DNA of 64,000 nt from Guillardia theta CCMP2712 (Eukaryota > Protista > Cryptophyta), in NCBI RefSeq assembly GCF_000315625.1, contig NW_005434574.1:215719-279718 (forward strand), given 5' to 3'. This document shows positions 52,764 to 62,605 of this stretch, piece after piece. Within the stretch, counting starts at the first letter, position 1. The number at the start of each line of letters is the position of its first letter. A program made the position numbers and the translations under genes. The notes beneath the pieces were generated by a model. That model saw nothing but the letters and a program-made list of their open reading frames with translations. It was not told where the DNA came from and did no database searches.

Positions 52764-55700
52764 TCATGTGCTGGGCTTGTCCTGATCGCATCGGATGACA
52801 ACAACGCTTGTCAGTTGCGAGCTCTCCTTCTTCGCTCTCAGAGTCCAGTAGCTCCTCGAGACAGACTCTGCCGGCCAGCCTTGCATGACCTCGTCCTCCT
52901 CCACAACCTCCCCGCTCAGTATCAGCGTGTGCTCGAGCAGCATGCTTCCTCGCATCATCCCTGAGCCGGAGAGCAGGCGGGTGTTTGCTCGCAGGGTGCA
53001 ACCCTGGCCAACGTGCACGCGATTCAGAGAGAACTCTCCTCTGCTGTTGAGATGCCCTATCAGTGAAGCGTTGTCCACCGCCGCCCCGTCCTCGATGTCC
53101 ACCAGCTCCGGTTCGGTCATCATAGGGTCAGCTCCAAGAGGATACAGGCAGACCCTGCTGCCGATGTTGCTGCCATGGAGTCGGAAGAACCAAACGAGGT
53201 AGGCAGAGCCCTGGAGGTAGGAAGGAATCGCACGACCGTTGTAGGCAGAGCGGAGGATCGAGGTCGAGCTGAGGTACACTTGCCACCACTGACAGTAGGA
53301 GGAGGCGTCCCAGTTGTAGCTCCCGACCTTTCTTCTCCCCAAGAAGATCCACTTGAACGAGACTGCAAGCAGGAGCGCGGTGATCGATGCAATTCCTTGT
53401 GTGCCCACGTAGATTGGGACGAGCCTGGCGGCCATCGTGATAAAGTAGAGGTGAGGGTGGTGGCCCCCGTACTGTCCTTGATGATTTCCAGTCTGCTGCA
53501 CGTTGTTCCCTCCTCCTCCTTGGCCTGACTGGTAGTTGCCTGTCTGCTGTCCTCCTCCTCCTCCTCCTCCTCCTGCGGCCAGGTACTCCGCGTGCATCCA
53601 TGCGAACGCAAGCTTGAACGCTGCAACGATGATCATGGAGCGGAAGCATGCGGTCAGGGCAGCACTGAGGCAGCCAATGGCTGCATGTGCCCATTCCGGG
53701 AGGAGCAAGTAGGGGGCGTTGTTGAGGTAGAAGGCATTGCCGAAGGGACGGAGGGTGGGGGCACTTGCTGTCTCCTCGTTGCCGTCCTCCAGCTTGATCG
53801 GCCTGCCGTCTCTGCTTCCTACCCACTTTGACCCAGCAGGAAGCAGCATGTCCTCGCACGCTATCCCCCCCGACCCCAGCACGGCGTTTCTGCCGACAAC
53901 ACAGCCAGGAAGCAAGACGCATCTGTCTCCGATGTTCGCGCCATCCTCTATCCTGATCGTCTTAGCGCAGTGAGCATGGCACGCCATGAAATTTGATCTG
54001 CTCCCAAACACAACGTCGTCTCCGACATGCAGCAAGTCGTACTCCACCAACCCCTCCAGCCCGCTGCCCGGCCAGTAGACTCGCTCTCCTACCTTGGCAC
54101 CGAGGAGGCGCAGGACCCAGGACATGGCGGAGTAGTGGGAGCCAACGAGCTGCCCGAGAGTCTGAAGTCTCTCGCCAGGAAGGAGCTCGCGCATGAGCCA
54201 GTGGCGGAAGATGCTGTACTCGGAGGCATCCCTATCGTCCTCCTCGGTAAACCGTCCTATCACCGTCCACTTGACCAGGAGGACGAGGAAGAAGCGGAGG
54301 AACGGGATGACTGTAGCTCGAACGATCCTGATGGCAACGTAGTAGCCGATCCTCCCGGGAGTGAGGAACCACATGATAGCCTGGTAGTAGTTGTGCACAT
54401 GCGAATGGTACCATGAGTGTCGCACCATGGCGACGAGGATTCCGAAGATTGGGAGGGCGCATGCAAGAGCGATTAGGAACTTGATGAGCAGCCCTGCCAG
54501 GTACCAGCCCATGCTCGGCCCTCGCGCCCTTGCCCTGCAGTACTTGGCGTTGTCACTCCCTACCCAGTTGCTGCTGATCTCGTAGGAGGAGGAGGAGGGC
54601 GGGAAACAGCAGCCGTCGGGCACAGGGATGCCGGGGACTAGTGACACGCGGACGGGGACTGAGACGCTGTTTCCGAGGAGGAGGGGTGCGAGTACCATGC
54701 TGCCGTTGTCCAGGCAGAAGGCTCGCAGAGAAGTCTTGTCGATGCACGAGTCGGAGCCGATGCTGATCTGCGAGGAGAATGAGAAGAGGGAGAGAGGGAG
54801 GGAGGAAAAGAAACAGAATAGTGACTGAGCAGCAGCAGGCAATTACGGTCAGGAAGGAGGAGGAGAAGGAGAAAGAGGAAGACAAGGAGAACGACAAGAA
54901 GGAGGAGAAGGAGGAGGAGGAGAACGAGGAGGAGGAGGAGGAGGAGAACGAGGAGGAGGAGGAGGAGGAGGAGGAGGAGCAAGAGGAGGAGAACGAAGAG
55001 GAGGAGGAGGACACTTACAAGGTCAAACTCTCCCATCTTGGCCTGATTGCTGATGATAACATTGCTCCCTATCTTAGCCCCCAGCATCCTGTAGTACCAG
55101 CGGAGGGAGGAGGAGGTGGCGTTGAAGACGCCAATACCGCAAATGCTGTGCATCTGATCCACAAGCCACCAGCGCAGGTAGTACTGATCTTGTGTCAGCG
55201 AGAGATTCAAGGGCGGAGAGAGGAAGAGGAGGAAGAGGGGGAAGAGAAAGAGAACCAGTGACAGAAACAGAACAGAAAGAGAAAGAGAGGAGAAAGAGAA
55301 TATTGGGGGATGCAGGGAGGGAGGGAGGGAGGGAGGGAGGGAGGGAGGAAAAAAGTAACAGAAGAGAAGGAAGAGGAGGAGGAGGAGGAGGAGGAGGAGG
55401 AAGAGGAGGAGGAGGAGAAGGAGGAGGTATTACCTGTCCCCAGAGCGGGTACCTTCCCTTCTTGTACCTGCCTATGATGGTCCACTTGAAGAGGATGAAG
55501 ACGATGGGAAGGACGATGGAGGAGGCGATCTGAGTGAGGAGGATCGCGATGATGAGTGTGTAGAGCCTCGGGACCCCAAGGGTCTGGAACTCAAACCAGA
55601 GGAAGACGAAAAAGAGCCAGACGGCAATGCGCTGGAGGGGATGGAGGAGGAAGAGGGGGAGGGCCTGGAGCAGCAGAGCTGAGAAGCTTGTGGAAGAGAA

Positions 55701-57517
55701 GGGAGGGCAGCGATCTTGGTCGAGGCTCTTGAATGATGCTGATCCTCCCTGCTCCATTACGATGCCCTTGCAGCTTCCTCCTGCCTGAGACCCGTAGGTG
55801 AAGGAGGAGGAGAGAGACGGAGCTGTCAGTTCCTCCTTCGCCTGCTCCAGCGCAAGCCTGTCCGCCAGCGCTGCCAGTGCCTCTATCGTCCTGTGCATGA
55901 AGACGGAGGAGGCGGGCAGGGAGACTTGAAGGCTCTTCCTGATCTTAGATGCCATCCTTCCCGCGAGCAGCGAGCTTCCTCCGCTCTCGAAGAAGTCTTC
56001 ATCCACTGCCACCTGCCTCCCAAGCAGTTCCTCCCAGATGCTCTGAATCTTCTCCTCGCTTATCGACTTTGGTGCCTTCCCCTCCCGACATGCCGAGCAG
56101 CCAGCCAGCAGGCTCGTCCTGTCCAGTGGGATCGTATCCACAGCAAGGATCTCCTTGGGGAGGAGGTATGCGTGCAGTCTCAACTTCAGCTTCTCCTGCA
56201 GCACGTCGATGATGACGGAAGAGGGGGAGACGAAGAGGAAGCGGGACCGGTACCCGTCCCTTCTAAGTGCCTCGTCGTGTACGATAGCAAAGTCTTCTAC
56301 CCCGACCTCTGACTTGATGGAGTCGAGGACGCGCTCCACCTGCTCTTACGATAAGAAGATGCTACCTTCACCTGCTCCCCGCCTCTCCACTCTCGTCTCC
56401 TGCTTCCTCCTTGGCCCCCATAGCTCGTCCTCCCTCCCTCCCTCCCTCCCTCGCTCCCTCCCTCCCTCCCTCCCTCCCTCCCTCCCTCGCTCCCTCCCTC
56501 CCTCCCTCCTTTTCCTCCCCTCCCCTCCCCTCCTTTTCCTCCCTCCCTCCCTCCCTCTCACCTTCTCGTCGTCACATGGCACAGCTCGCATTGGGATCAT
56601 CACGTTCAACCCGCTCCCTCGAGGAGGAGCAGACGCCTCAAACAGCCGCAGCATCTCCCCAGCCTTGTCCTCCACCTCTGCTATCCCCAGCCTGCTCGCC
56701 AATCGGATCCTCTGCGCCTTGTTCGCCTGCCCCTTGGGAATCTCATCCATAAACACAAGCAGCTGCGGCCACTTTGCGGGGTGCAGCAGGGAAGACGCGT
56801 GTCTGTGAACTTCCTCCAGGTCCACCCGCGGCATGCCGGGCTGAGGGACGAGGGCTATGGCGACTACCTCCTGGAAGACAGCATGAGGAGCTGAGAAGGC
56901 GATCACATCCTTGATCCTCTCGTGCTGCACCATCGCCTCCTCAACCTCGAATGGAGAGATTACTTCTCCTCCTCTGTTGATAATCTCCTTCGACCTCCCC
57001 GTCAGGTAGATCCATCCGTCCTCGTCCACGTACCCCCTGTCGCCCGTGTTGAACCATCCTCCCTCTAGGAATGCTTCTCTGTTCGCCTCCTCGTCCTCCT
57101 CGTACCCGTTCATGACCGGAGCTCCCTTCAGAGTGATGTTCCCTTCCTCTCCTACCCCAGCGTCCTCCCAGTATCGTCCATGATCCTCACCAGCGGCCCC
57201 ACGATCTGCCCGCTCGAACCGGGGCGGTCGAGCTGATAGGAGGAGGAAGGAGAAGAGATGGGCATGCATTCAGTCATGCCGTAGCTGGGGAGGACGGTGC
57301 AGTTGAGCTCTGACCGCATCCTCTCTGCCAGTGAGGCAAGCAGGCCACCAGCAGCATTTGCCACCATTCTCAGCTTGCTCTTGTGCTGGGTGGGACGGGA
57401 CGCCTTCTCCTCGAGAATCATGGTGTGCATCGTTGGACCTGCAAAAATCAATCAACAAATCACATCATCTCCATCATCATCATCATCATCGTGATCATCA
57501 TCGTGATCATCATCGTG

Positions 57518-57605
<88 letters not shown>

Positions 57606-57607
57606 AT

Positions 57608-57690
<83 letters not shown>

Positions 57691-59380
57691 AATTTTCTCT
57701 TCCCTTGTACCTGCATAGTACCACGTGATATTAAGAGATTCCATCACATCCCAGAACTCTGATGCATCAAAACTAGACGCGCAGACTGCTCCTCCTCCAC
57801 TGAGAATCTGAAAAATCCATCAGTCTTTCTCCTCCTCCTCCTCCTTTTCCTCCTCCTTCTCCTCCTCCCTCTCCTCCTACTCTCCCTCCTCCTCCTCCTC
57901 CTCCTCTCCTCCGCCTCTGCCTCCTCCGCCTCCCCTTTTATCCTCTTGCTCTTCTCCTCTTTCCTCCCTCCCCTTCCTCACCGGAGCAACGATGTTTCTC
58001 AATATCCCCCCTATGTGAAACAGCGGCATCATGTTTATACAGCAGTCTTGCTTGCTGAGCCCCCACGATTCGATAATGCAGGCAGCGCCGACAATGATGG
58101 TCTCCAGGGAGTAAGGTACCATCTTGCAGTGAGCGAGTCAGGTTGACGCATGTCAAACTAGCCAGGCAGCACCTTCTTCTTCCCTGATGTCCCTGATGTG
58201 TGCAAGACGAGCGCTACGTCATGCATCCTTGTGAAACAAGTCTCTTTCCTCCCTCCTTCCGTCTCTCTCCCCTGGACAAGCTTCAAGGAGAACAACCCGG
58301 CTGTCTTGTCGCTCGGGATGATCGCTAGCTGCACCAGTCCAAGGCAACGGCAGAGCTCCTCGTGCTGTGCTCCTTCACTCTCGAGCGAGATGAGGGCCTT
58401 GCACCTGGTCCCGCGTACCTCCTGCTCGATCTGCACCAAGATGATCAGCAAGCATCGCAGCAGGAAAAGAAGAGAAGAGTGAAGAGGAGGGGATAGAAGA
58501 GGAGAAGCAAGAGGACAAAGAGGGCTATCCAGGAGGAGGAGGAGGAGGAGGAGGAGGAGGAGGAGGAGGAAGACGAGAAGGACAAGGAGGAGGAGGAGAA
58601 GGAGGAGGAGGAGGAGGAGGAGGAGGAGGAGGAGGACGATGAGGACGAGGACGAGGAGGAAGACGAGAAGGACAAGGAGGACGAGGAGGACGAGGAGGAC
58701 GAGGAGGACGAGGAGGACGAGGAGGACGAGGAGGACGAGGAGGACGAGGAGGACGAGGAGGACGAGGAGGACGAGGAGGACGAGGAGGACGAGGAGGACG
58801 AGGAGGAGAACTGCTCAACCTCTGAAAGCGTCTGCTGGTAGTTGACCGGCACACAGCAGCACCGCGACATTGCCAGCAGCAGGCATACCGCCAGCTCTGG
58901 CCCGTTGGGCAGGAGGATGGCGCACCGGTCCTGCGGGCTGACTCCGAACTTACTGAGATCCTCGTCTCTTAAGAACTGGACAAGTCTGCTGTGGGTAAGA
59001 GGAGAACGCTTCATATGCTCGGGGTCTGATATGGCGAACGCCCCGCAGTGTTCTCTCGCCTGGGGCATGAGCTCAAGGAGGGTAGTGACCCCCTTGCTCT
59101 TCAGCGCCTTCTTCACGTCCTCTCCTTTCATCCTAGGAACGACCTCCACTGCTCCCGTCTGATCCAGCGCTCTAACGCGTGCCTCTCCTGTCACGACCTC
59201 CTGCAGCACATCGAAGATGCTCATCTCTGACCCATCCAACCTCCTCCTCGACACTGTCTCGGCATAGCTTCCCGTCGGCTCGTGCTCCACATCCTCGTCG
59301 TCTCTCTTCCACTGGGTGATCGAGCCCTGAGGAGAGGGCATGTCTATCTGCTCTTCAAGGTTTTCCACCTTCACTGGCAT
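52764..59380 (-). CDS. Membrane-bound NRPS-like enzyme: adenylation + carrier (T) + TM/hexapeptide-repeat terminal domains (Pls/polymalate-synthetase-like architecture)
   Basis: A domain: LHTSGTSGKKK, MPLFHIGG, SYGMTE, WFNTGDRG, GRSKEIINRGGE. T domain: DFFESGGSSLLA. Three repeats of TM + KWxxxGR…YYLRWWL/GAKIG/GAKVG/GSNIG with hexapeptide strands (VGDDVVFG, IEDGANIG, VGQGCTL). About 8 exons. One apparent frameshift at 57155-57158. Confidence 0.88.
57463..57690. repeat. (CAT)n microsatellite filling intron 57439-57710 of the NRPS-like gene
   Basis: Directly visible; the flanking exons join as WYYA|GPTMH. Confidence 0.95.
58531..58808. repeat. (GAG)n/(GAGGAGGAC)n microsatellite in intron 58431-58819
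   Basis: Directly visible; the exons join as QQTLSE|IEQEVRG. Confidence 0.95.
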
Positions 59381-60699
59381 AGCGCGTGATCTAGTTCCGC
59401 CTGGACATGAAACTGCTCCGCCGGGAGTCCTGTGGAAACAACTTTGTGAGCTTGACGTGTTATGCGATGTTCTTTCTCAGGTAAGCACATCACTCCTGAG
59501 ATTGACCTCTAACCCTCCTCCCATCAACCTCTTTGTTCTTCTGCGAGCTTCTGCCTCCTCTGATCAACTCTTATCTGCTCCTGTCTTCTCACGTACTCTC
59601 CGTATCCTCGATGTCATTCCGTCCCATCCTCCTATACATTCTCCACTCTATATGCTCGCTCATCCGCCCGCTCTCCTTCCTTGCTCCTCTCCCCTCCTCT
59701 CCTCTCCTCTCCCCTCCCCTCCCCTCCTCTCCTCTCCCCCCTCTATATCACGGGAAGTTCCTTTCCCCTGATCCACTCGTTTCCGATTGACTCATTGGAT
59801 TTCTTGGAAGGCGCATGTACCCCCACCCCCTGTAAGCATAAAAACTACCCACCCTTGAATAGTAAAATTCTGAAGAAATTCCACCCCTACCCCTACAACG
59901 TACACGATCTTTTATATTTCTCCACTTGTATATGTCACTGCTCAAAAAAGAGAGTACCCCTTCGATGGCGGGGAAAAGGACCCTCCCCTATGTAGAGCTG
60001 AAATATAGATAGGAAGATAGGGGTGATCTTGATCTTAAACGGTGTTTCGTCCCAAGGACCGGTGGTACAGTTTTTGAGAGTACGAACTTGGGACTCGGGA
60101 AAAATGTACGGGTCCTTGGATGTCAATTTCCTGTTTGAGGCAGTGGGGAAATGAGGGGTAGGGTACCAATGAATTCCATGGAGTGGGGTCCTTTCATTGA
60201 GGGGGTGATTTTGCACGGGTAGTTGAGGCCTGGATGCATCCAAGTATGGAGGCATCGGGACCGCATTGCCTCTTCCAATATGAAACGATGCATTTTAACA
60301 ACGTTTCGAATGTAGTAAAGACTTCATGGGGAGTGTGTGTGGTCATTCAAGTGTCCAGCGAACCTTATCCCCTCAACGCAGAGTAGGGGTCACCCAAGGT
60401 ACCCCAATTTAAGAAGTCTCCGGACCGGGTATTGATAGCATTGGTCAGTCAGTCATGACCGGTACTACCGGTGGCAACTTACAAAGGTTAAAAAAAAAAT
60501 GTCATCGGGTCCACCGTGGCAGGTTCAAGGGCTTGAACGGTAAAGTTCCCCGGGCTCCCCGGGCTAGCCCACCCCCTCCCCTCTGCTACATTGGACCGGT
60601 CCGAGTACGACCAACAGCGCATGTCTAGAGGCACGACCCCCCTCACGATGCCTCCCATAATGGAGGCACCTCAACCCGCTAAGTTTGATTCGAGGCTAT

Positions 60700-61490
60700 A
60701 AATGGGAGCCCGGGGCCCGGGCGGCGGGGGGGCCGCACTGCACGGACCGATCGGACCGTCGGACGGTGCGGCACTGCCCGGCGGCCGATCGGATATCCGA
60801 CGGTTACTAAAGTTACCGGACAGTCACTCCGGCCGGACTCCGGTGACATGGAGCCCGCTGAGCCCGGCCCTCAGTATTCACAGTGGTGGCAGGGGCGGCC
60901 GGTGGCCGATCATCGATCATCCCGGACGCGCGGTGAGACCGTACGGACTGGGCCGGGGGCCCCCGCGTTAGTCCGATACGGTCACCGGGGCACGGAGTCC
61001 CCCCGGGGCGTCAGGCTGGCGGCCGGGCGGCCGGGCGGGTGCCACGGACGGTGCACGCCGGTACGGCCCGCCTGAGTGAGGGCCGGACTCCCGGCCGGGG
61101 CGGCCGGCCCGGGCGGCCCCGCGGGCATCATGATTGCGATCCGGAGCTGTGAACCGTCAATTCACGGTTCCTGGAGTCCGGGAACTTACGGAAGCCCGGC
61201 CGCTCTCCCGAGTCCGACTCGATGATCTTGGCCCGGGCCCGGGCCGGCAGTACAGACGCCGCCGGTACCGGGTACGGTCCCTGCAAACGCATCCGATCCA
61301 GGATCCGCCCCCCCAGGCCGGCCGCCAGTCACCATACCGGCGGGCCCGGCCGGCCGGGCGGCCGCAGTAGTCCGACTGAGTACGGTACTCCGTATGTGCA
61401 CTGCTGCCGCTGTGCAACTGGCCGGGCCCCGGGCCGGGCCATCAACGGTCGCGCCGGGTTCCGCCGGAAGTTCACTCGGAAGTTTCGAGA
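60700..61490. repeat. GC-rich palindromic-word island
   Basis: Composition as in the other islands. Confidence 0.6.
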
Positions 61491-61763
61491 TACTATTGGA
61501 ATCAATTCCTGACTCCTAGAGTCTGTGCACAGATGAATGACTAGTAGAACAGCTCAACAGCTGACTGATAAGTCCAAAGACCAAGACTCACAGATGATGT
61601 GCGCATGAAGACACCAATGACTTTCACAGCCAACCAAACACCTCAGGTAACTCAGATCAACTTCCCAACAATCCCCAGCACTTTATTCCCAACACTCGTA
61701 GCAGCAAGACCAACCAAACAGCTTCCCTTCACACACCACCGCCTTACTTCCACCACTGTACGA

Positions 61764-62605
61764 NNNNNNNNNNNNNNNNNNNNNNNNNNNNNNNNNNNNN
61801 NNNNNNNNNNNNNNNNNNNNNNNNNNNNNNNNNNNNNNNNNNNNNNNNNNNNNNNNNNNNNNNNNNNNNNNNNNNNNNNNNNNNNNNNNNNNNNNNNNNN
61901 NNNNNNNNNNNNNNNNNNNNNNNNNNNNNNNNNNNNNNNNNNNNNNNNNNNNNNNNNNNNNNNNNNNNNNNNNNNNNNNNNNNNNNNNNNNNNNNNNNNN
62001 NNNNNNNNNNNNNNNNNNNNNNNNNNNNNNNNNNNNNNNNNNNNNNNNNNNNNNNNNNNNNNNNNNNNNNNNNNNNNNNNNNNNNNNNNNNNNNNNNNNN
62101 NNNNNNNNNNNNNNNNNNNNNNNNNNNNNNNNNNNNNNNNNNNNNNNNNNNNNNNNNNNNNNNNNNNNNNNNNNNNNNNNNNNNNNNNNNNNNNNNNNNN
62201 NNNNNNNNNNNNNNNNNNNNNNNNNNNNNNNNNNNNNNNNNNNNNNNNNNNNNNNNNNNNNNNNNNNNNNNNNNNNNNNNNNNNNNNNNNNNNNNNNNNN
62301 NNNNNNNNNNNNNNNNNNNNNNNNNNNNNNNNCGCTGCGGATGCAGTGCGGTCGCACCCCGCCAACAGTGCACCTGTGCTGCTCCTCCACCTGCGCTGCG
62401 GCTTCTCCCCACCATCGTAGGGCCTGCGCTGCTCCTCCAGCGCTTGCGCTTCAGCAGCACTCCTGCAGCACCTGCGCTGTCCTCCTCTAGCGCATCCTGA
62501 TGCTCNNNNNNNNNNNNNNNNNNNNNNNNNNNNNNNNNNNNNNNNNNNNNNNNNNNNNNNNNNNNNNNNNNNNNNNNNNNNNNNNNNNNNNNNNNNNNNN
62601 NNNNN
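61764..62605. other. Assembly gaps (61764-62332, 62506-62605) in a degenerate tandem repeat
   Basis: N runs. The unit CTCCAGCGCTTGCGCTTCA…TCCTCTAGCGCATC.TGATGCTC occurs on both sides of the second gap. Confidence 0.9.

What the first reader, a model, noticed from the sequence alone, without database searches (positions are those of the whole stretch)
52764..59380. Algal membrane NRPS-like polymer synthetase candidate with an acid-CoA-ligase-type A domain
Seen: a single A-T module followed by three TM-flanked hexapeptide-repeat units, with no canonical C or TE domain. Known: this terminal architecture typifies epsilon-poly-L-lysine synthetase Pls, and a similar A-T-membrane layout was reported for Aureobasidium polymalate synthetase. 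The A domain (LHTSGTSG, MPLFHIGG, WYYAGPTMH, SYGMTE) resembles oxalate-CoA ligase (PCS60/AAE3)-type enzymes rather than amino-acid A domains. Inference: it may polymerise or transfer a small carboxylic or hydroxy acid, a product I am not aware of from cryptophyte-like algae.
Basis: partly seen in the sequence, partly recalled or inferred. Interest (0 to 1): 0.75.

Follow-up and report, generated by a model that had tools for sequence, protein, structure and literature searches.

The report
Polymalate-synthetase-like membrane enzyme gene, Guillardia
This is a nine-exon nuclear gene of the cryptophyte alga Guillardia theta for a one-module, membrane-anchored "NRPS-like" enzyme of the family that probably includes the fungal polymalate synthetase; the family is widespread, and this copy carries an unresolved one-base frameshift in the reference assembly.

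Summary
On the minus strand, 59380-52764 holds nine exon pieces. Seven introns were read and are GT-AG; the eighth (E6/E7) has its acceptor read, but its donor lies in a stretch I could not examine. [quoted passage not shown] There is no C or TE domain.

The genome is Guillardia theta CCMP2712. The gene is already public as hypothetical protein GUITHDRAFT_145316, and that model is wrong inside the A domain.

The A domain is closest to oxalyl-CoA synthetases (AAE3, LsOCS and a third oxalate-CoA ligase entry, 8aff). However, the two oxalate-specific residues are replaced (Ser289 to Ala, His319 to Pro) and His216 is Gly.

The same pocket is nearly invariant across a large family in fungi, Physarum, diatoms, green algae, cryptophytes and some bacteria. 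That family includes the Aureobasidium cluster that most probably is the published polymalate synthetase. The best reading is therefore a malate-type (hydroxy)acid polyester synthetase, a new member of a known kind.

Caveats:
- A 1-nt frameshift at 57155-57157 could not be resolved; no reads were laid.
- Substrate and product are untested.
- An intact paralog lies on contig C8.

The parts
58820..59380 (-). Exon 1 (187 codons): start ATG at 59380, N-terminal extension and start of the A domain; ends ...QQTLSE followed by GTTGAG
   Evidence: ORF and frame reading; donor GT; weak AMP-binding match; colinear with residues 115-262 of the Hanusia transcript P0152
58173..58430 (-). Exon 2 (86 codons): A domain including the P-loop/A3 motif LHTSGTSGKKK
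   Evidence: Acceptor CAG and donor GTGCTG; AMP-binding match; maps to P0152 263-358
57982..58122 (-). Exon 3 (47 codons): A4 motif MPLFHIGG. The His corresponds to AAE3 His214; the AAE3 His216 position is Gly
   Evidence: pocket mapping from the alignment to 5ie0 and PMC8905533
57711..57807 (-). Exon 4 (32 codons plus 1 nt, phase 1): ILSGGG...NITWYYA(G); missing from the public gene model
   Evidence: Acceptor TTTTTCAG, donor GTACAA; maps to P0152 406-437; absent from P0186
57155..57438 (-). Exon piece 5: (G)PTMH...RMVANAAGG...SYGMTECMPI...DDTGRTLG. It carries the positions equivalent to AAE3 C288-S289 (Ala-Ala), A313-M314 (Gly-Met) and H319 (Pro). Its frame runs into TAG at 57154-57156
57155..57157 (-). 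Frameshift site. The assembly reads CTGGGGTAGG. The homologous reading ...TLG|VGEEGN... needs one more G (a run of five, not four). The last codon of piece 5 and the first codon of piece 6 share base 57155
   Evidence: The paralog and all relatives read straight through. The public model bridges the site with an implausibly small intron that drops the conserved VRIMDDTGRTLG
56568..57155 (-). Exon piece 6 (196 codons examined): end of the A core, hinge GRSKEIINRGGE, C-terminal A subdomain with the A10 lysine (PKGQANKAQR) and a linker.
55434..56339 (-). Exon 7 (302 codons): linker; carrier (T) domain at about 56054-55866 with the phosphopantetheine serine in FFESGGSSLLAG at 55973-55971; TM1 (about 55685-55581); TM2 (about 55568-55476); start of the terminal domain (...GRYKKGRYPLWGQ)
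   Evidence: PP-binding 49.7 bits and TIGR02353 profile positions 2-78 on the same ORF; helices; junctions
55019..55183 (-). Exon 8 (55 codons): YYLRWWLVDQ...GAKIGSNV...EFDL, first part of beta-helix unit 1
   Evidence: TIGR02353 profile positions 79-132; acceptor CAG, donor GTAAGT
52767..54767 (-). Exon 9 (667 codons; stop at 52764-52766): rest of unit 1; TM3 (about 54512-54420); TM4 (about 54389-54258); unit 2 (about 54257-53715); TM5 (about 53696-53568); disordered Gly/Gln-rich insert (about 53561-53466); TM6 (about 53456-53340); unit 3 (about 53339-52815) with the family-invariant His in ASLIGHLNSRG at 53054-53052
   Evidence: TIGR02353 107.7 bits and Hexapep; 1,414 relatives; model and hydropathy; invariant columns of alignment A1; coordinates

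Best explanation
The locus is the G. theta nuclear gene GUITHDRAFT_145316. It is one of two paralogs encoding a single-module, membrane-embedded NRPS-like synthetase.

Shown:
- The gene has an ANL adenylation domain built on the oxalyl-CoA-synthetase scaffold, a carrier domain with its serine, and a Pls-type terminal domain.
- In that terminal domain, six membrane helices in three pairs carry three left-handed beta-helix (hexapeptide acyltransferase) units.

Inferred:
- The A domain adenylates a small (hydroxy)dicarboxylic acid larger than oxalate, most likely L-malate. It loads the acid as a thioester on its own phosphopantetheine arm in place of CoA.
- The three beta-helix units, packed as a pseudo-trimer on the membrane helices, use the arm-bound thioester as acyl donor in the way hexapeptide O-acyltransferases use acyl-CoA. 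They transfer the acyl group to the hydroxyl of the next unit or growing chain. The invariant His at 53054-53052 is the candidate general base.
- Repeating this step builds a poly(beta-malate)-like polyester at the membrane.

The enzyme belongs to the family that most probably includes the Aureobasidium PMA synthetase. In the reference assembly this copy lacks one base in a G-run. It is either intact with an assembly error, or a very recently disabled copy whose intact paralog on contig C8 carries the function.
For: - Domains and order.
- Gene structure: the seven introns read are GT-AG, and the exon pieces are colinear and gap-free on the 1,725-aa Hanusia phi transcript, which has A, T and terminal domain in one ORF.
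- A domain: the best solved relatives are the oxalyl-CoA synthetases 6qjz, 5ie0 and 8aff (E 1e-52 to 1e-68 for the cryptophyte A domain). Malonyl-CoA synthetase scores 1e-38 and NRPS A domains about 1e-26 to 1e-27.
- Pocket: AAE3 V215-H216, C288-S289, A313-M314 and H319 read I-G, A-A, G-M and P here. The Aureobasidium cluster has the same residues apart from V for I, and the same motifs recur in the Physarum, diatom, green-algal and bacterial members examined, with conservative variation such as V/I/A or A/G (PMC8905533).
- PMA synthetase is described as A-like, T and C-like with six TM regions and no TE, from a 5,049-bp gene (PMC11286673, PMC9210645). Aureobasidium has one ortholog cluster per species in this family, of 1,688-1,690 aa.
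- Terminal-domain model: pLDDT 90.8. Its beta-helix units match only hexapeptide O-acyltransferases such as serine, maltose and galactoside O-acetyltransferases. The pseudo-trimer has been described for PosA (PMC10522769).
- Purifying selection: against a 93 % identical environmental contig, dN/dS is 0.11 and mismatches by codon position are 7/8/46.
Against: - No biochemical or transcript evidence exists for this copy. Read laying laid nothing, and RNA runs of the species hold only 0.01-0.02 of the sampled words.
- The assembly has a frameshift at 57155-57157.
- The only close relative found, contig L009, carries a TGA stop and a 1-nt deletion.
- I could not verify by accession that cluster P0272 is QHD40385.1.
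- As reviewed in the papers read, the published evidence summarised for PMA synthetase is gene removal and restoration plus domain prediction, and the enzyme had not yet been isolated.
- The family is ubiquitous in Pezizomycotina (Fusarium, Trichoderma and others). I know of no polymalate reports for most of these, so the product may differ across the family.
- In the tree the cryptophyte clade lies in the major branch that does not contain Aureobasidium.
Confidence: 0.6

Rival explanations
1. The window copy is a recently inactivated pseudogene. The family assignment holds, but this locus makes no full-length enzyme, and the C8 paralog (GUITHDRAFT_84689) is the working gene.
For: - A one-base deficit in a G-run puts exon pieces 5 and 6 in different frames, and no intron can repair it.
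- The public model had to skip conserved residues to get past the site.
- The 93 % identical environmental relative L009 has a TGG-to-TGA stop and a 1-nt deletion.
- Transcript-derived proteins exist for the C8 type (Hanusia) but none for the window type.
- RNA runs hold almost none of the sampled words.
Against: - There is only one lesion in about 1,670 codons.
- All donor and acceptor sites examined are intact, and every catalytic motif is kept (A3, A4, A5, hinge, A10 Lys, carrier Ser, invariant His).
- dN/dS is 0.11.
- A missing base in a G-run, in a gene whose introns are largely microsatellite, could be a consensus error (my inference; assembly quality was not examined).
- The absence of G. 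theta transcripts in the protein collection applies to the paralog too: P0176 also has a single member.
Confidence: 0.35
2. The enzyme is not a polymerase. It activates a small acid and transfers it once from the carrier arm to a membrane or cell-surface acceptor such as a lipid, glycan or protein hydroxyl or amine.
For: - The beta-helix units resemble single-turnover hexapeptide O-acyltransferases.
- The family occurs in very many fungi and protists, for most of which I know of no homopolymer report.
- No chain-length or release element is recognisable.
Against: - As far as I know from the papers read, every characterised enzyme with this terminal domain is an iterative homopolymer synthetase: Pls and PosA (PMC10522769) and PMA synthetase (PMC11286673).
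- The three-fold arrangement with paired TM helices is conserved from those polymerases.
Confidence: 0.2
3. The enzyme is an oxalate-activating enzyme: a true AAE3/PCS60 function fused to a carrier and a membrane transferase.
For: The oxalyl-CoA synthetases are the top solved relatives by a wide margin. Several fungal members are annotated as oxalate-CoA ligase or peroxisomal CoA synthetase.
Against: - Ser289 and His319, the residues conserved only in oxalyl-CoA synthetases and in direct contact with oxalate (PMC8905533), are Ala and Pro here.
- His216 is Gly and Ala313 is Gly, which enlarges the pocket.
- Oxalate has no hydroxyl or amine with which to form a chain.
Confidence: 0.05
4. The enzyme is a cationic homopoly(amino acid) synthetase like Pls or PosA.
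For: It shares the A-T-terminal-domain architecture and TIGR02353 homology. Amino-acid-type homologs are reported in some lower eukaryotes (PMC10522769).
Against: - The A4 position that holds the alpha-amino-binding Asp in amino-acid A domains (first specificity residue; Asp217 is essential in PosA) is occupied by the ANL gate His in PLFHIGG. This rests on my own motif correspondence.
- NRPS A domains score about 40 orders of magnitude worse than CoA ligases.
- TIGR02353 scores below its cut-off.
Confidence: 0.03

Closest known systems
Polymalate (PMA) synthetase of Aureobasidium melanogenum (QHD40385.1; Wang et al. 2020, as reviewed in PMC11286673, PMC9210645 and PMC11905612)
   Same: Both have one A-like domain, one T domain and a C-like membrane domain with six TM regions, and no TE. 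The size is similar (about 1,680 aa against about 1,670 codons here). The Aureobasidium cluster P0272 is homologous over its full length: about 50 % identity to the cryptophyte A domain and 32-34 % over the 800-aa terminal domain. Its acyl-pocket residues are the same.
   Different: The cryptophyte clade sits in the other major branch of the family tree, with Physarum, a diatom, Mesostigma and the bacterial members. I did not verify by accession that P0272 is QHD40385.1. The window protein has a Gly/Gln-rich insert between TM5 and TM6. No polymalate has been reported from cryptophytes, to my knowledge.
epsilon-Poly-L-lysine synthetase Pls and delta-poly-L-ornithine synthetase PosA (TIGR02353 family)
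   Same: Both have the single A-T module, a terminal domain of about 730-800 residues with three pairs of TM helices and three beta-helix units packed with approximate three-fold symmetry, and no C or TE domain (PMC10522769).
   Different: TIGR02353 scores 189.5 bits against a cut-off of 423.1. The A domain is of the acyl-CoA-ligase type, not the amino-acid type. The expected bond is an ester, not an isopeptide.
Oxalyl-CoA synthetases AtAAE3 (5ie0), LsOCS (6qjz) and the oxalate-CoA ligase of entry 8aff
   Same: These are the best solved relatives of the A domain over its whole length. The P-loop, gate His, hinge and A10 Lys are conserved.
   Different: Those are soluble enzymes of about 515-545 aa that use free CoA. 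Here the acceptor is a fused carrier domain. The oxalate-specific Ser289 and His319 are Ala and Pro, and His216 is Gly (PMC8905533).
Hexapeptide-repeat O-acyltransferases (serine, maltose and galactoside O-acetyltransferases)
   Same: They share the left-handed beta-helix fold, and they are the only solved structural matches to the three units. They transfer an acyl group from a pantetheine thioester to a hydroxyl, and they work as trimers.
   Different: Here the three units lie in one chain, each preceded by two membrane helices, and the donor thioester sits on a covalently attached arm.

Membership tests
Pls/PosA-type homopolymer synthetases (NCBIfam TIGR02353) | Single A-T module followed directly by the terminal membrane domain, with no condensation or thioesterase domain | tested here: met
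   the precomputed Pfam of P0186 lists only PF00501, PF13193, PF00550 and PF00132
Pls/PosA-type homopolymer synthetases (NCBIfam TIGR02353) | Six TM helices in three pairs, each pair followed by a soluble unit of about 180 residues (C1-C3) with beta-helix fold | tested here: met
   AlphaFold2 model with pLDDT 90.8; hydropathy of the six helices; hexapeptide acyltransferase fold matches
Pls/PosA-type homopolymer synthetases (NCBIfam TIGR02353) | TIGR02353 score at or above the curated cut-off of 423.1 bits | tested here: not met
   189.5 bits, E 9e-56, for P0186. Hanusia, Aureobasidium, Physarum and bacterial members of the same subfamily score 166-220 bits
Pls/PosA-type homopolymer synthetases (NCBIfam TIGR02353) | Amino-acid-type A domain with the alpha-amino-binding Asp as first specificity residue | tested here: not met
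   A4 is PLFHIGG. The best relatives are acyl-CoA ligases, and NRPS A domains score far lower. The Asp requirement is from PMC10522769. The motif correspondence is my own reading
PMA-synthetase-like family (Aureobasidium PMAS) | A-like domain, T domain and C-like domain with six TM regions, no TE, about 1,680 aa | tested here: met
   against the description in PMC11286673 and PMC9210645
PMA-synthetase-like family (Aureobasidium PMAS) | Full-length homology to the Aureobasidium enzyme, with the same acyl-pocket residues | tested here: met
   P0272 is in the hit lists and in alignment A1. The pocket reads V/I-G, A-A, G-M, P in both
PMA-synthetase-like family (Aureobasidium PMAS) | The Aureobasidium cluster used here is the published QHD40385.1 | tested here: inconclusive
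   The accession is not among the 15 of 52 members listed, and no cluster carries the name. Only one ortholog cluster per Aureobasidium species exists, and the sizes agree (1,688 aa against a 5,049-bp gene)
PMA-synthetase-like family (Aureobasidium PMAS) | Activates L-malate and makes poly(beta-L-malate) | not testable with these tools
   Needs adenylation assays and polymer analysis
Oxalate-CoA ligase (AAE3/PCS60) | Ser289 and His319 (AtAAE3 numbering), conserved only in oxalyl-CoA synthetases and in contact with oxalate | tested here: not met
   Ala and Pro in the window exons and in the family members examined (PMC8905533)
Oxalate-CoA ligase (AAE3/PCS60) | Free-standing soluble ANL enzyme of about 515-545 aa | tested here: not met
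   Here it is fused to a carrier and an 800-aa membrane domain

The most novel reading that the evidence does not exclude
Cryptophyte algae, and by extension the many diatoms, green algae, chrysophytes, chytrids and some bacteria that carry this family with an essentially invariant acyl pocket, make poly(beta-malate) or a closely related polyester at their membranes. That would be an unrecognised, widespread biopolymer. The Physarum member (P0191) would then be the long-sought Physarum polymalate synthetase.
Probability: 0.3. Interest if true: 0.7.

Novelty: new member of a known kind. Interest (0 to 1): 0.45.

Why it matters
As far as the papers I read go, polymalate is known from Physarum, Aureobasidium and Penicillium cyclopium (PMC11905612), and a 2022 review states that the Physarum synthetase has never been identified (PMC9210645).

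The same A-T-membrane enzyme, with the same acyl pocket, occurs in cryptophytes, diatoms, green algae, chytrids, most Pezizomycotina, Physarum and a few bacteria. This turns the question "who makes this polymer, and why" into a directly testable one, and it gives clear candidate genes.

For this locus alone the result is modest. The gene is already in the databases as a hypothetical protein, with a faulty model, and it may be disabled in the sequenced strain. The public labels on fungal relatives ("oxalate-CoA ligase", "peroxisomal CoA synthetase") are probably misleading, because the oxalate-binding residues are absent.

Tried and rejected
Expression, splicing and the G-run length are therefore untested for this copy. 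After I sent no reference covering 56496-56567 to any tool. Searches had covered it earlier. In later scripts that blasted against the window I masked those places.
- A second copy of the frameshift region in the assembly: only the locus itself and the 69 % identical paralog turned up.
- Near-identical protein fragments covering exon piece 6: the best was 66 % identical, which is paralog-like.
- Close relatives in metagenome contigs: the best was 48 % identical.
- Linking QHD40385.1 to a cluster by accession or name failed.
- The mixture-model tree did not finish. The tree shown is a quick LG+G4 tree with SH-aLRT support only and a midpoint root, and it holds no amino-acid-type Pls outgroup. 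It therefore supports clade membership but not direction of transfer.
- Rfam found nothing in the window.
- I rejected an intron as the explanation for the frame change at 57157. The only GT...AG options are 9 nt, or 39 nt (a multiple of three that removes conserved residues).
Pieces were searched by reference. For whole-domain work I used stored natural sequences: the public model P0186, whose terminal part agrees with my junctions, and the Hanusia transcript P0152.

Full report
**What is in the sequence.** On the minus strand between 59380 and 52764 there is a chain of open pieces whose translations are unmistakably one protein. I scanned each piece by reference. In order they give AMP-binding, AMP-binding_C, PP-binding, then TIGR02353 (Pls/PosA terminal domain) with a Hexapep match, and no condensation or thioesterase domain.

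**Gene structure.**
- There are nine exon pieces. Seven introns were read at both ends and are GT...AG. For the eighth (E6/E7) the acceptor is read, but the donor lies in the stretch I could not examine.
- Six of the eight introns are largely microsatellite arrays: (AGGAGGACG)n, (CTC)n, (ATC)n with 78 copies, (CCTC)n, (GAG)n and (AGG)n.
- The pieces map colinearly and without gaps onto residues 115-1692 of a 1,725-aa transcript-derived protein.

**Whose gene it is.** The assembly has 87.1 Mb in 669 contigs. A word search names it as Guillardia theta CCMP2712. The gene is public as hypothetical protein GUITHDRAFT_145316 (P0186, 1,616 aa). A paralog, GUITHDRAFT_84689, lies on contig C8 with the same exon breaks but ordinary introns.

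P0152 is an MMETSP transcript in the Hanusia phi cluster and is the ortholog of the C8 paralog. It carries A, T and terminal domain in one ORF. This answers the "separate transcripts" objection by homology. In addition, the T domain and the first two membrane helices share exon 7 here.

**Faults in the public model, and the frameshift.** P0186 omits exon 4 and the start of exon 5 (ILSGGG...WYYAGPTMHTMILEEK). It also jumps over VRIMDDTGRTLG through an implausibly small intron.

The reason is a frame change. Piece 5 ends ...DDTGRTLG and runs into TAG, while the homologous continuation VGEEGNITLKG... is in another frame and shares base 57155. The assembly has CTGGGGTAGG where an intact reading needs one more G. 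The paralog and all relatives read straight through, and no intron can repair it.

I could not settle whether this is an assembly error or a real lesion:
- The assembly has no second copy of the region.
- The protein collection has no near-identical fragment.
- Metagenome contigs have no close relative of this part.

From then on I worked beside them, so the donor site of exon piece 6 was not examined.

**Selection.** L009 is an environmental contig 93 % identical to 53023-54090. Against it, mismatches by codon position are 7/8/46 and dN/dS is 0.11, so this gene lineage has been under strong constraint. Yet L009 itself carries a TGG-to-TGA stop and a 1-nt deletion. I read this as a functional gene family in which this particular copy may be decaying recently in more than one lineage. 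Alternatively, there may be errors in two assemblies. I put the pseudogene reading for this copy at about 0.35.

**The A domain.** Its best solved relatives, by a wide margin, are the oxalyl-CoA synthetases 6qjz, 5ie0 (AtAAE3) and 8aff. NRPS amino-acid A domains score tens of orders of magnitude worse.

The specificity residues differ, however. In AtAAE3 the oxalate pocket is formed by V215-H216, C288-S289, A313-M314, H319 and K500. S289 and H319 are conserved only in oxalyl-CoA synthetases (PMC8905533). From the residue-level alignment and the motif table, the window has I-G, A-A, G-M and P. The A10 lysine and the gate histidine are kept. The pocket therefore looks enlarged (my inference from the smaller side chains) and lacks both oxalate-specific residues.

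The same signature, PLFH(V/I/A)GG ... NA(A/G)GG ... SYGMTECMPI, is nearly invariant in all family members examined, from bacteria to fungi to algae. This argues for one shared substrate across the family.

**The terminal domain.**
- TIGR02353 matches at E 9e-56 but scores 189.5 bits against a curated cut-off of 423.1. Hanusia, Aureobasidium, Physarum and bacterial members score alike, at 166-220 bits. This is a sister subfamily of Pls/PosA for which NCBIfam returned no better-scoring terminal-domain model.
- I ran an AlphaFold2 model of the terminal part of the stored public model, using 64 aligned relatives. It is confident (pLDDT 90.8, pTM 0.90). It shows three pairs of long hydrophobic helices, each followed by a beta-helix unit, and the only disordered part is a Gly/Gln-rich insert between TM5 and TM6.
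- Foldseek finds only hexapeptide O-acyltransferases for the units, and no solved whole domain.
- The layout fits the pseudo-trimeric model published for PosA (PMC10522769).
- Invariant or near-invariant residues include a His in unit 3 (ASLIGHLNSRG, 53054-53052).

**The family.**
- The exhaustive search finds 1,414 representatives at E up to 1e-3, many of 1,300-2,000 aa.
- Named members include chytrids, Pezizomycotina, a mucoromycete, Physarum polycephalum, a diatom, Coccomyxa, Mesostigma, chrysophytes and a cercozoan.
- Bacterial members are found in Novosphingobium, Kitasatospora, Planctomycetota and Myxococcota. These have the same CoA-ligase-type A domain.
- In a quick tree the window protein sits in a 100 %-supported clade with the C8/Hanusia pair and four environmental sequences. 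The Aureobasidium/Pezizomycotina clade is the other major branch.

**Link to a known function.** PMA synthetase of A. melanogenum (QHD40385.1) is described as an NRPS-like enzyme with an A-like, a T and a C-like domain, six TM regions and no TE, from a 5,049-bp gene (PMC11286673, PMC9210645, PMC11905612). In this family Aureobasidium has one cluster per species: P0272 for A. melanogenum (1,688 aa) and P0349 for A. pullulans (88 % identical). I take P0272 to be the PMA synthetase, but I could not confirm the accession.

**Mechanism.**
- Shown: the domain order, carrier serine, adenylation motifs, six TM helices and three acyltransferase-fold units.
- Inferred: the acid (most likely L-malate) is adenylated and loaded on the arm. 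The beta-helix pseudo-trimer then transfers the thioester-bound acyl group to a hydroxyl, iteratively, at the membrane.

**Rivals.** The alternatives are a single-transfer acyltransferase (0.2), oxalate activation (0.05) and an amino-acid polymer (0.03). Independently of these, this copy may be a pseudogene (0.35).

Noticed in passing
window 58531-58807, 57829-57933, 57459-57690, 56429-56495, 55364-55427, 54855-55011: Six of the eight introns of this gene consist largely of microsatellite arrays, for example (ATC)n with 78 copies and (AGGAGGACG)n with 31 copies. Several stay open in frame, which makes the ORFs look longer than the exons. The paralog on C8 has introns at the same positions without such arrays.
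   Followed up: partly
public protein P0186 (GUITHDRAFT_145316) against window 57155-57807: The public gene model omits exon 4 and the start of exon 5, and it bridges the frameshift with a tiny intron that deletes the conserved VRIMDDTGRTLG. The deposited protein therefore lacks part of the A domain core.
   Followed up: yes
window about 53466-53561; L009:520-600: A Gly/Gln-rich low-complexity insert lies between TM5 and TM6. It is disordered in the model, absent from the paralog, and differs in length by 15 nt from the 93 % identical environmental contig.
   Followed up: partly
L009 (ENA ERZ930071 contig, 1,052 nt), aligned to window 53023-54090: This environmental relative of the window copy shows a strongly synonymous substitution pattern (dN/dS 0.11) but contains a TGG-to-TGA stop and a 1-nt deletion. 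It is either a decaying ortholog or a contig with errors.
   Followed up: partly
P0191 (Physarum polycephalum transcript, 1,728 aa): Physarum is the classical polymalate producer, and a 2022 review says its synthetase is unidentified. It has a full-length member of this family containing the family's NAAGG and SYGMTECMPI pocket motifs; my motif scan mis-anchored on an upstream SSGSS in this protein, so its A4 motif was not read. It is an obvious candidate.
   Followed up: partly
L012, L013, L015 (Novosphingobium), L021 (Kitasatospora), L014, L017, L020 (Planctomycetota), L016, L018 (Myxococcota): A few scattered bacteria carry the same CoA-ligase-type A-T-terminal-domain protein, 35-40 % identical to the algal terminal domain. 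In the unrooted quick tree they form one clade among eukaryotic sequences, which suggests horizontal transfer in one direction or the other.
   Followed up: partly
G000:C8:1086000-1095999 (L008), minus strand: This is an intact paralog (GUITHDRAFT_84689) with the same exon breaks. Its Hanusia ortholog is expressed (MMETSP transcript). Identity to the window copy is 52-54 % in the terminal domain and 65-73 % in the A-domain core.
   Followed up: yes
window 60500-62500: The sharp GC drop after 61500 is an artefact of a scaffold gap (a run of N from 61765). The stretch 60500-61450 before it is very GC-rich (0.67-0.72), with repeated GGCCGGGCC-type motifs.
   Followed up: partly
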